Under the pieces are notes generated by a model. It saw nothing but the letters and a program-made list of their open reading frames with translations, searched no databases and had not been told where the DNA came from. A program made the translations under genes and the position numbers. DNA of 63,746 nt, filler included, from Octopus bimaculoides (lineage: Eukaryota), in the NCBI RefSeq assembly GCF_001194135.2. It is 5 parts of 4 records of this genome, joined end to end, with 100 filler letters (N's around TTAATTAATTAA, not from the genome) between each part and the next. Parts side by side here need not be neighbours in the genome. Positions count along the whole stretch, not along the records: positions 1 to 23,854 come from NC_069005.1; 4 more parts are not named here. One strand, 5' to 3'. Positions 20,574-20,762 of this stretch are shown here, piece after piece. Each line of letters begins with the position of its first letter. Position 1 is the stretch's first letter.

Positions 20574-20762
20574 CAGGAAATAAGTGTTTTCGGCCAAGCA
20601 TTTCTGCAAAAATGCAACCAACAGACCACATATCCATAGCACTACCATATTCCAGGAGAGAGAACATAATTTCTGGAGCTCGGTACCAGCGAGTTGCTAC
20701 GTAGTGGGTTAAGAAGTTGTTGGTGCCATCAAATAGGGAGGAGTGGATCCCACGGGCCATAC
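20574..20762 (-). CDS. MAPK7: MAPK7/ERK5 coding exon 2 (activation loop THY, APE)
   Basis: Acceptor ttcacag|GT completes the Gly of DFG. Encodes [30 protein letters not shown]...LFP. Donor G|GTAAAT at 20573. 189 nt, phase 1-1. Confidence 0.95.

What the first reader, a model, noticed from the sequence alone, without database searches (positions are those of the whole stretch)
20698..20712. ERK5 orthologue with a T-H-Y activation loop instead of T-E-Y
Seen: exon 2 reads TTC TTA ACC CAC TAC GTA GCA ACT = FLTHYVAT. Established: ERK1/2/5 use T-E-Y, p38 T-G-Y and JNK T-P-Y, and the middle residue contributes to MAP2K and phosphatase recognition. The rest of the protein is clearly ERK5 (YHDPDDEP, basic NLS, C-terminal transactivation motifs), and the catalytic K, E, HRD, DFG and APE are intact. 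CAC cannot be converted to a Glu codon by A-to-I editing (only to Arg). Inference: a lineage-specific rewiring of the MEK5-ERK5 module.
Basis: partly seen in the sequence, partly recalled or inferred. Interest (0 to 1): 0.7.

Follow-up and report, generated by a model that had tools for sequence, protein, structure and literature searches.

The report
Octopus ERK5 with T-H-Y loop
The window holds the already-annotated Octopus bimaculoides ERK5 (MAPK7) gene, whose activation motif really reads Thr-His-Tyr, but the "textbook" Glu had been replaced by Gln in the common ancestor of molluscs, annelids and brachiopods, so the octopus His is a one-base step at an evolutionarily loose position and not evidence of a rewired pathway.

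Summary
On the minus strand, 20715-20692 reads TTC TTA ACC CAC TAC GTA GCA ACT (FLTHYVAT), and the His codon is 20706-20704. A 9-exon, all GT-AG model gives a 1216-aa protein 100% identical to RefSeq XP_014785606.1, "MAPK7 [Octopus bimaculoides]". The window is byte-identical to GCA_001194135.2 CM046625.1. T-H-Y is not an assembly error. O. sinensis and O. vulgaris also have it, and a more diverged octopod keeps His with the synonymous codon CAT. The interpretation needs correcting. T-E-Y is not the relevant baseline, because every other mollusc, brachiopod and annelid ERK5 sampled has T-Q-Y (CAG where DNA was read). Decapodiform cephalopods have T-L-Y (CTG/CTC), and starfish, urchin, crinoid and hemichordate have T-V/S/N/T-Y. 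Only chordates, a sponge and a placozoan keep T-E-Y. Thr, Tyr, the catalytic residues, the ERK5-type Q-loop, the Arg258 equivalent, the docking motif, the NLS and the tail motifs are all intact. Published work places MEK5-ERK5 specificity in docking, not in the loop sequence. Most likely this is a tolerated Gln-to-His change in a normally MEK5-activated ERK5. Interest is low to moderate. The clade-wide loss of Glu appears unremarked in the literature I could search.

The parts
21298..21913 (-). Coding exon 1 of MAPK7/ERK5. It carries the ATG at 21913-21911, the Gly-rich loop GIGAYGVV (21718-21695) and the VAIKK Lys (21661-21647). It also carries the alpha-C Glu in REIKIL (21601-21584), the ERK5-type Q-loop SKQPLTEEH (21454-21428), HRDLKPNN (21364-21341) and the start of DFG.
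   Evidence: Model identical to XP_014785606.1.
20574..20762 (-). Coding exon 2, the activation-loop exon: [18 protein letters not shown]224-H225-Y226[10 protein letters not shown]. It also holds the Arg258-equivalent in EMLGRK (20604-20587).
   Evidence: It is the only copy in the piece, with no alternative exon.
20701..20709 (-). The T-H-Y dual-phosphorylation motif: ACC (20709-20707), CAC (20706-20704), TAC (20703-20701). The His codon corresponds to CM046625.1:30846700-30846702.
19586..19693 (-). Coding exon 3 (GKDYIKQAQLIIEILGSPSEKFLSACQSDLIKKFLI-).
18739..18950 (-). Coding exon 4, the end of the kinase domain with the common-docking motif YHDPDDEP (18801-18778).
17493..18222 (-). Coding exon 5, the start of the ERK5-specific C-terminal tail (EQGAALQAFVKQLRER, DDIEMLSAKS, LIKAALRNS).
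16879..17001 (-). Coding exon 6, the basic NLS RQREREDKRRKRKERALKRMKDKK (16951-16880).
15042..16294 (-). Coding exon 7: the LLERW motif (16247-16233), poly-Q tracts and a long low-complexity Ser/Thr/Pro-rich tail.
14076..14335 (-). Coding exon 8: LSKQLSKYQVEE...AVTPKGTGGGYGVG (14173-14132). By my recollection of the human sequence, this is the conserved tail TP site and GYGVG transactivation-region motif.
   Evidence: Conserved in the decapodiform P0122.
13247..13406 (-). Coding exon 9: SSLLAHWMDV...SYSDLSLCSS and the stop codon.

Best explanation
The window carries the single-copy Octopus bimaculoides MAPK7 (ERK5) gene, already annotated in RefSeq. It encodes a full-length ERK5 with an intact kinase core, Thr224 and Tyr226 as phospho-acceptors, ERK5-type docking surfaces, an NLS and a long transactivation tail. 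The middle residue of its T-x-Y motif is His because of a single-nucleotide change (CAG to CAC/CAT) from Gln. Gln is the state fixed in the spiralian ancestor and is still found in all other molluscs, brachiopods and annelids sampled. Decapodiform cephalopods made a different one-base change (CAG to CTG, Leu). The position is evolutionarily labile in non-chordate bilaterian ERK5, and ambulacrarians show S, V, T, N and A. Most likely the protein is still activated by MEK5 through dual phosphorylation of Thr224/Tyr226. Specificity would come from PB1/D-motif docking, and His would be a tolerated substitution that at most tunes kinetics, chaperone dependence or phosphatase recognition. Shown: the sequence state, its conservation within octopods under purifying selection, its phylogenetic distribution, and the conservation of catalytic and docking residues. 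Inferred: continued MEK5 dependence and near-neutrality of His.
For: Gene identity: the model is 100% identical to XP_014785606.1, and the window is identical to GCA_001194135.2 CM046625.1. The best solved-structure matches are all human MAPK7, at 458 bits versus 354 for ERK2. A profile of the tail alone retrieves annotated MAPK7 from molluscs, Lingula, Owenia, sea urchin and fishes. Reality and constraint of His: O. sinensis has CAC with 4/189 synonymous-only differences, and O. vulgaris has THY. A diverged octopod has CAT, with 9 synonymous and 1 non-synonymous differences. Distribution: TQY occurs in chiton, 8 bivalves, 8 gastropods, Lingula, Owenia and Capitella. TLY occurs in Acanthosepion and in several decapodiform spliced transcripts. 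TSY, TVY, TNY and TTY occur in urchin, starfish, crinoid and hemichordate. TEY occurs in amphioxus, hagfish, vertebrates, a sponge and Trichoplax. Codons are CAG in two TQY transcripts, CTG/CTC in decapodiforms and CAC/CAT in octopods. The NJ tree supports Spiralia at 97%, cephalopods at 100%, octopods at 100% and decapodiforms at 100%. T, Y and [10 protein letters not shown] are invariant, and the Q-loop length and Arg258 equivalent are conserved. Literature: specificity lies in docking, not the loop (PMC3605678). Slt2 E191G is still phosphorylated by its MAP2K (PMC9106771). THY and TQY MAPKs exist and are active in trypanosomatids (PMC3100106). MEK5 is present in oyster (PMC4883820), and a MAP2K5-like transcript is present in Euprymna (PMC4361686).
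Against: There is no direct biochemical evidence that octopus ERK5 is phosphorylated on Thr224/Tyr226 or that octopus has MEK5, which I did not search for. Gln is strictly conserved across non-cephalopod Spiralia for more than 500 My, so the position is not free there. Both coleoid lineages left Gln and also remodelled the rest of the loop: the S-P-[ED]-E segment is lost and Met became Leu before Thr. That pattern hints at a real shift in constraint in coleoids. In yeast Slt2, changing the middle Glu abolishes Hsp90 binding and catalytic output, so the residue can matter functionally. No octopus transcript was available to exclude His-to-Arg editing.
Confidence: 0.8

Rival explanations
1. Adaptive regulatory change in coleoid cephalopods (a weakened form of the reader's idea). 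Leaving Gln for His in octopods and Leu in decapodiforms, together with remodelling of the whole activation loop, altered how ERK5 is activated or switched off. Possible targets are MEK5 kinetics, autophosphorylation, dual-specificity or tyrosine-phosphatase recognition, Hsp90/Cdc37 dependence, or the balance of catalytic and non-catalytic output.
For: Gln is invariant in all other spiralians sampled but was replaced in both coleoid lineages. Each new residue is then conserved within its lineage: His through a synonymous CAC/CAT change, and Leu as CTG/CTC across decapodiform clusters. The coleoid loops also lost the S-P-[ED]-E segment that is conserved from sponge to human. Slt2 E191G shows the middle residue can uncouple Hsp90 binding and catalytic from non-catalytic signalling.
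Against: The two coleoid lineages fixed chemically dissimilar residues (His versus Leu), which does not point to a specific new function. Ambulacrarians tolerate S, V, T, N and A. THY arose independently in at least three other TQY-type lineages (P0411, P0445, P0471). Docking determinants are unchanged. Published data place MAP2K specificity outside the loop.
Confidence: 0.13
2. The His is a sequencing or assembly error, and the true codon is Glu or Gln.
For: None found. The window has N-gaps, but they all lie downstream of the gene.
Against: The same His occurs in three annotated Octopus species and in three independent read-level assemblies of a fourth octopod that uses a different His codon. 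There are no Ns in the gene.
Confidence: 0.01
3. A-to-I RNA editing recodes the His codon in mRNA (CAC/CAT to CGC/CGT, Arg), so the functional motif differs from the genomic one.
For: Coleoids edit extensively (general knowledge). The codon has an editable A at position 2.
Against: Editing could give only Arg, never Glu or Gln. Decapodiform codons CTG/CTC have no A, and their transcripts read Leu, so editing cannot be a shared coleoid mechanism. No octopus transcript carrying this exon was present in the searched collection, so this was not tested directly.
Confidence: 0.03
4. The octopus protein is drifting towards a non-catalytic, scaffold or transcription-only ERK5 that no longer needs canonical loop phosphorylation.
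For: ERK5 and Slt2 have kinase-independent transcriptional functions (PMC9106771). The loop is unusually diverged in coleoids.
Against: All catalytic residues, Thr224, Tyr226 and the flanking [10 protein letters not shown] with its phosphate-binding arginines are intact. The kinase domain differs by only 4 residues between O. bimaculoides and O. sinensis, while the tail differs far more. That is strong purifying selection on the kinase domain.
Confidence: 0.03

Closest known systems
Vertebrate ERK5 / MAPK7 (human Q13164; structures 4IC7, 4B99)
   Same: About 60% identity over the kinase domain, and the best structural-database match. It shares the one-residue-longer Q-loop, the Arg258 equivalent, the YHDPDDEP docking motif, the basic NLS, LLERW and the TP-GYGVG tail motifs, with the same overall architecture.
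   Different: The middle residue of the T-x-Y motif is His, not Glu. The loop lacks the S-P-A/E-E segment. The tail is longer (1216 aa versus 816 aa in human, from memory) and has poly-Q/N/T tracts.
Spiralian ERK5 with T-Q-Y (e.g. Haliotis rufescens, Pecten maximus XP_033748588.1, Patella vulgata XP_050408899.1, Lingula anatina, Owenia fusiformis, Capitella teleta)
   Same: Orthologues in one clade with 97% bootstrap support. They also lack Glu and share the same tail motifs.
   Different: They have Gln (CAG) where octopus has His (CAC/CAT). They keep S-P-[ED]-E-P and Met before Thr.
Decapodiform cephalopod ERK5 with T-L-Y (Acanthosepion pharaonis CAE1313574.1; transcripts P0122, P0145)
   Same: The sister lineage, 81% identical in the kinase domain, with the same FL-T-x-Y context and the same exon structure and tail motifs.
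   Different: Leu (CTG/CTC) instead of His.
Trypanosomatid MPK10 (T-H-Y) and MPK12 (TQY/TSY/THY)
   Same: MAPKs with a T-H-Y motif conserved across species and with reported phosphotransferase activity. The same Q/S/H interchange is seen between orthologues (PMC3100106).
   Different: They are unrelated MAPK subfamilies in protists, not ERK5 orthologues, and lack MEK5 and PB1 docking.
Yeast Slt2/Mpk1 (T-E-Y), the functional counterpart of ERK5
   Same: An Hsp90-client MAPK with catalytic and non-catalytic transcriptional outputs, and experimental mutation of the middle residue is available for it (PMC9106771).
   Different: It has Glu. The E191G mutant is still phosphorylated but loses Hsp90 binding and catalytic output. 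This shows what a middle-residue change could do, not what His does here.

Membership tests
ERK5 / MAPK7 subfamily of MAP kinases | The kinase domain is more similar to ERK5 than to any other MAPK. | tested here: met
   the top 11 PDB matches are all human MAPK7 (450-459 bits), the next is 387 bits, and ERK2 scores 354; identical to the RefSeq protein named MAPK7.
ERK5 / MAPK7 subfamily of MAP kinases | Intact catalytic core (Gly-rich loop, VAIK Lys, alpha-C Glu, HRD, DFG, APE). | tested here: met
   locates each motif in the model. One search shows them as invariant columns.
ERK5 / MAPK7 subfamily of MAP kinases | T-x-Y dual-phosphorylation motif with Thr and Tyr, followed by [10 protein letters not shown]. 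| tested here: met
   T224-H225-Y226[10 protein letters not shown].
ERK5 / MAPK7 subfamily of MAP kinases | The middle residue is Glu (T-E-Y), as in the textbook definition. | tested here: not met
   His here. The feature also fails in all spiralian and ambulacrarian proteins annotated as MAPK7. It is therefore a chordate and non-bilaterian trait, not a defining feature of the orthologue group.
ERK5 / MAPK7 subfamily of MAP kinases | ERK5-type docking surface: a Q-loop one residue longer than in ERK2, Arg at the human Arg258 position, and an acidic CD motif (criteria from Glatz 2013, PMC3605678). | tested here: met
   there is no gap against mammalian ERK5 through SKQPLTEEH, and EMLGRK aligns with GEMLARR. 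YHDPDDEP is present.
ERK5 / MAPK7 subfamily of MAP kinases | A long C-terminal extension with a basic NLS and transactivation-region motifs. | tested here: met
   The tail is about 850 aa with RQREREDKRRKRKER, LLERW and TPKG..GYGVG. A tail-only profile retrieves annotated MAPK7 from fishes and sea urchin at E 1e-38 to 1e-25.
ERK5 / MAPK7 subfamily of MAP kinases | Phylogenetic placement inside the ERK5 clade, separate from ERK1/2. | tested here: inconclusive
   The NJ tree places it firmly within a spiralian MAPK7 clade (97%). Deep nodes are unresolved, and the rat ERK2 outgroup falls among TEY ERK5s with 27% support. A likelihood tree with more outgroups is needed.
ERK5 / MAPK7 subfamily of MAP kinases | Specific activation by MEK5 (MAP2K5) through PB1/D-motif docking. 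| not testable with these tools
   Only indirect evidence: MEK5 in oyster (PMC4883820) and a MAP2K5-like transcript in Euprymna (PMC4361686). Octopus MEK5 was not searched for.

The most novel reading that the evidence does not exclude
Coleoid cephalopods, alone among spiralians, abandoned the T-Q-Y state that had been fixed for more than 500 My. Octopods took His and decapodiforms took Leu, and both remodelled the rest of the ERK5 activation loop. This may reflect a genuine change in how ERK5 is switched on or off in this clade, for example altered Hsp90/Cdc37 dependence, phosphatase recognition or autophosphorylation. More broadly, the Glu of 'T-E-Y' may be dispensable for MEK5-ERK5 signalling in most bilaterians, which would make the middle residue a tunable element.
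Probability: 0.13. Interest if true: 0.5.

Novelty: new variant of a known kind. Interest (0 to 1): 0.27.

Why it matters
The specific claim matters little. The gene is an ordinary, already-annotated ERK5 orthologue, and the His is a one-step change from the spiralian Gln. Three wider points are useful. First, the textbook statement that ERK5 is a T-E-Y kinase is chordate-centred: Spiralia have T-Q-Y and Ambulacraria have variable residues. I found no paper noting this. The only two papers in the searchable library that contain both 'TQY' and 'ERK5' concern protists and plants. Second, phospho-specific antibodies raised against pT-E-pY peptides should not be expected to detect active ERK5 in molluscs, annelids or echinoderms, and pTEpY signals there should reflect ERK1/2 only (inference). 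Third, natural Q/H/L/S/V/T/N variants offer a ready-made panel for testing what the middle residue does in MEK5 recognition, chaperone binding and dephosphorylation.

Tried and rejected
- Alternative exon: I looked for a hidden mutually exclusive copy of the activation-loop exon with TEY or TQY. tblastn of octopus, squid and human (from memory) exon-2 peptides against the piece found only the one exon, and the introns have no N-gaps.
- Exact look-up of the window's exon-2 ORF found nothing on record.
- The first homologue search with the 364-aa kinase domain missed all full-length octopus and mollusc proteins. The tool appears to return only hits up to about 1.7 times the query length. I recovered them with a tail-only profile from which low-complexity runs were removed.
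- Literature searches for TQY/THY in ERK5 or for cephalopod ERK5 found nothing relevant.
- The NJ tree did not resolve deep MAPK relationships. I therefore rest orthology on tail motifs, PDB scores and identity to RefSeq.
- MEK5 co-variation was not attempted.
- No Nautilus or other early-branching cephalopod sequence was recognisable, so the Q-to-H and Q-to-L changes cannot be ordered.
- Structure prediction was not run. It would not tell what the His does, and spliced window sequences are not accepted.
- The repeat scan of the window found only microsatellites and N-run artefacts.

Full report
**Observation.** The + strand at 20692-20715 reads AGTTGCTACGTAGTGGGTTAAGAA. In the gene model the motif is Thr224 (20709-20707), His225 (CAC, 20706-20704) and Tyr226 (20703-20701).

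**Gene model and identity.**
- ORF listing and frame translations gave nine minus-strand coding exons: 21913-21298, 20762-20574, 19693-19586, 18950-18739, 18222-17493, 17001-16879, 16294-15042, 14335-14076 and 13406-13247.
- All internal junctions are GT-AG. The CDS is 3651 nt and encodes 1216 aa.
- The protein is 100% identical to XP_014785606.1, "mitogen-activated protein kinase 7 [Octopus bimaculoides]".
- The 9267-bp locus fetched for that protein (GCA_001194135.2, CM046625.1:30838943-30848209) is byte-identical to the window, with no N in the gene.
- The gene is therefore already annotated. It is 95% identical end to end to O. sinensis XP_029651079.1, with the same exon junction residues.

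**ERK5 hallmarks.**
- The kinase domain matches human MAPK7 structures best, at 450-459 bits against 354 for ERK2.
- It has the Gly-rich loop, VAIKK, the alpha-C Glu, HRD, DFG and APE.
- It has the one-residue-longer Q-loop (SKQPLTEEH) and the Arg corresponding to human Arg258. Glatz et al. 2013 single these out as ERK5-specific docking features (PMC3605678; alignment).
- It has the YHDPDDEP docking motif, a basic NLS, LLERW and a TPKG..GYGVG tail motif.
- A profile built only from the tail retrieves annotated MAPK7 from molluscs, Lingula, Owenia, sea urchin and many fishes.

**Is the His real?**
- O. sinensis exon 2 differs from the window at 4 of 189 positions. All four are synonymous, and the codon is CAC.
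- The O. vulgaris protein CAI9740872.1 has the same loop.
- An exon-2 profile search found P0354, a genomic exon 2 from three independent read-level assemblies (SRR11869385, SRR11869390, SRR11869391) of a more diverged octopod.
- P0354 has 10/189 exon differences with only one non-synonymous, and its introns are about 83% identical. Its His codon is CAT.
- His retained through a synonymous codon change, in an exon evolving almost only synonymously, shows purifying selection and rules out an assembly error.
- There is no second copy of the exon in the piece.

**Distribution of the middle residue**.

| Motif | Taxa |
|---|---|
| T-H-Y | Four octopod taxa |
| T-L-Y | Acanthosepion pharaonis and two further decapodiform clusters, represented by many full-length spliced transcripts (P0122, P0145 and members) |
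| T-Q-Y | Chiton (Liolophura) |
| T-Q-Y | Bivalves: Mactra, Mytilus, Sinanodonta, Mya, Pecten, Dreissena |
| T-Q-Y | Gastropods: two Haliotis, Gigantopelta, Batillaria, Lymnaea, two Patella, Lottia |
| T-Q-Y | Brachiopod (Lingula); annelids (Owenia, Capitella) |
| T-S-Y, T-V-Y, T-N-Y, T-T-Y | Strongylocentrotus, Patiria, Anneissia, Ptychodera, in that order |
| T-E-Y | Amphioxus, hagfish, jawed vertebrates, the sponge Ephydatia, Trichoplax |

- T-Q-Y also accounts for 61 of the 120 best exon-sized fragments in the exon-2 search.
- Thr, Tyr and the following [10 protein letters not shown] are invariant throughout.
- T-H-Y also turns up in at least three other unnamed lineages. For one of them (P0445) the nearest relatives are T-Q-Y (P0411, P0445, P0471).

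**Polarity and mutational path.**
- An NJ tree with 100 bootstraps supports a spiralian ERK5 clade (97%), cephalopods (100%), octopods (100%) and decapodiforms (100%).
- Within Spiralia every non-coleoid has Gln, so Gln is the ancestral spiralian state.
- Codons are CAG in two T-Q-Y transcripts, CAC/CAT in octopods and CTG/CTC in decapodiforms.
- His and Leu are therefore each one nucleotide from CAG.
- Whether the coleoid ancestor had Gln or His cannot be decided without Nautilus or Vampyroteuthis.
- Glu is ancestral for the family by outgroup comparison (sponge, placozoan, chordates, ERK1/2, yeast Slt2).
- It was lost either twice (Spiralia and Ambulacraria), or once in early bilaterians and regained in chordates. 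The two scenarios are equally parsimonious.

**Mechanism.**
- The evidence I could read points elsewhere. Glatz et al. 2013 conclude that MKK5-ERK5 versus MKK1/2-ERK1/2 specificity is set by PB1-domain and D-motif recruitment rather than by catalytic recognition of the loop.
- They also report that an MKK5(PB1-D)-MKK1 chimera activates ERK5.
- The title of Jiang et al. [quoted passage not shown]
- In yeast Slt2, E191G is still phosphorylated under stress. It loses Hsp90 binding and catalytic (Rlm1) output, while non-catalytic (Swi4/6) output rises.
- T-H-Y and T-Q-Y MAPKs are known in trypanosomatids.
- MEK5 exists in oyster, and a MAP2K5-like transcript exists in the squid Euprymna.
- The best-supported reading is therefore a normally MEK5-activated ERK5 in which His is a tolerated replacement of Gln.
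- If the residue has an effect, the Slt2 precedent suggests looking at chaperone dependence and catalytic versus non-catalytic output rather than at MAP2K choice. This last step is inference.

**What keeps a more interesting reading alive.**
- Gln is strictly conserved across the rest of Spiralia, yet both coleoid lineages left it.
- Coleoid loops also lost the S-P-[ED]-E segment that is conserved from sponge to human, and they changed Met to Leu before the Thr.
- This suggests a shift of constraint on the whole loop in coleoids. I give an adaptive or regulatory explanation about 13%.

**Novelty and verdict.**
- The gene and its sequence are public and correctly named.
- T-x-Y variability is well known in MAPKs generally.
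- I found no paper that notes the non-Glu state of invertebrate ERK5, but the searchable library excludes most subscription journals.
- Epelboin et al. 2016 first pointed out that MEK5 and ERK5 exist in a lophotrochozoan, correcting the statement in Glatz 2013 that protostomes lost the pathway.
- The finding is a real, conserved, minor variant of a known kinase.
- Its framing as a departure from T-E-Y and as pathway rewiring is not supported.
- Interest is low to moderate, mainly for the clade-level pattern and its practical consequence for phospho-antibody use.

Noticed in passing
window 22666-22940: A 20/40-bp minisatellite (about 14 copies of CCAGACAGGAAAGCTATTGG) lies 750-1000 bp on the 5' side of the MAPK7 start codon. 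The + strand ORF 22477-23043 with KAIGQTGKLL... repeats is this array read in frame and is not a gene.
   Followed up: partly
window 20938-21050 (intron 1): A purine-rich 51-bp unit is repeated about 2.2 times just upstream of the activation-loop exon. The surrounding intron is dense in (GA)n/(A)n tracts.
   Followed up: no
window 20710-20760 (minus strand); P0144-P0146, P0001: Coleoid ERK5 activation loops (octopus [17 protein letters not shown], decapodiform MARGISSSQSDNENYFL) have lost the S-P-[ED]-E segment found from sponge to human and in other molluscs. They also have Leu instead of Met before the phospho-Thr.
   Followed up: partly
P0188, P0193, P0202, P0217 (related proteins): Ambulacrarian MAPK7 orthologues each have a different middle residue: urchin TSY, starfish TVY, hemichordate TTY, crinoid TNY. 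Amphioxus and vertebrates keep TEY.
   Followed up: partly
P0195 (Pecten maximus XP_033748588.1): A published survey states that the ERK5 gene is absent from the scallop Chlamys farreri and similar in other bivalves (PMC8356821). RefSeq nevertheless holds MAPK7-like proteins with T-Q-Y for Pecten maximus, Mytilus, Dreissena and others. The literature claim looks like a search artefact, possibly because T-E-Y was used as a criterion.
   Followed up: partly
P0411, P0445, P0471, P0209: T-H-Y occurs in several other unnamed ERK5-like sequences. For P0445 the closest relatives carry T-Q-Y (P0414, P0427, P0429, P0439), so Gln-to-His has happened repeatedly.
   Followed up: no
window 15900-16100 and 21830-21905 (minus strand); P0144: The poly-Q tracts of the tail and the N-terminal poly-N tract differ in length between O. 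bimaculoides and O. sinensis, while the kinase domain differs by only 4 residues.
   Followed up: no
window ~4010-4650, ~7900-8700, ~9730-9980: Runs of N (assembly gaps) flanked by (TA)n microsatellites all lie downstream of the gene's 3' end. The long 'inverted repeats' at 7867-8749 are artefacts of an N-run.
   Followed up: no
method note (vs 41): the search for homologous proteins returned no hit longer than about 1.7 times the query length. The 364-aa kinase-domain query missed the 1216-1231-aa octopus proteins that a 734-aa tail profile found at once.
   Followed up: partly
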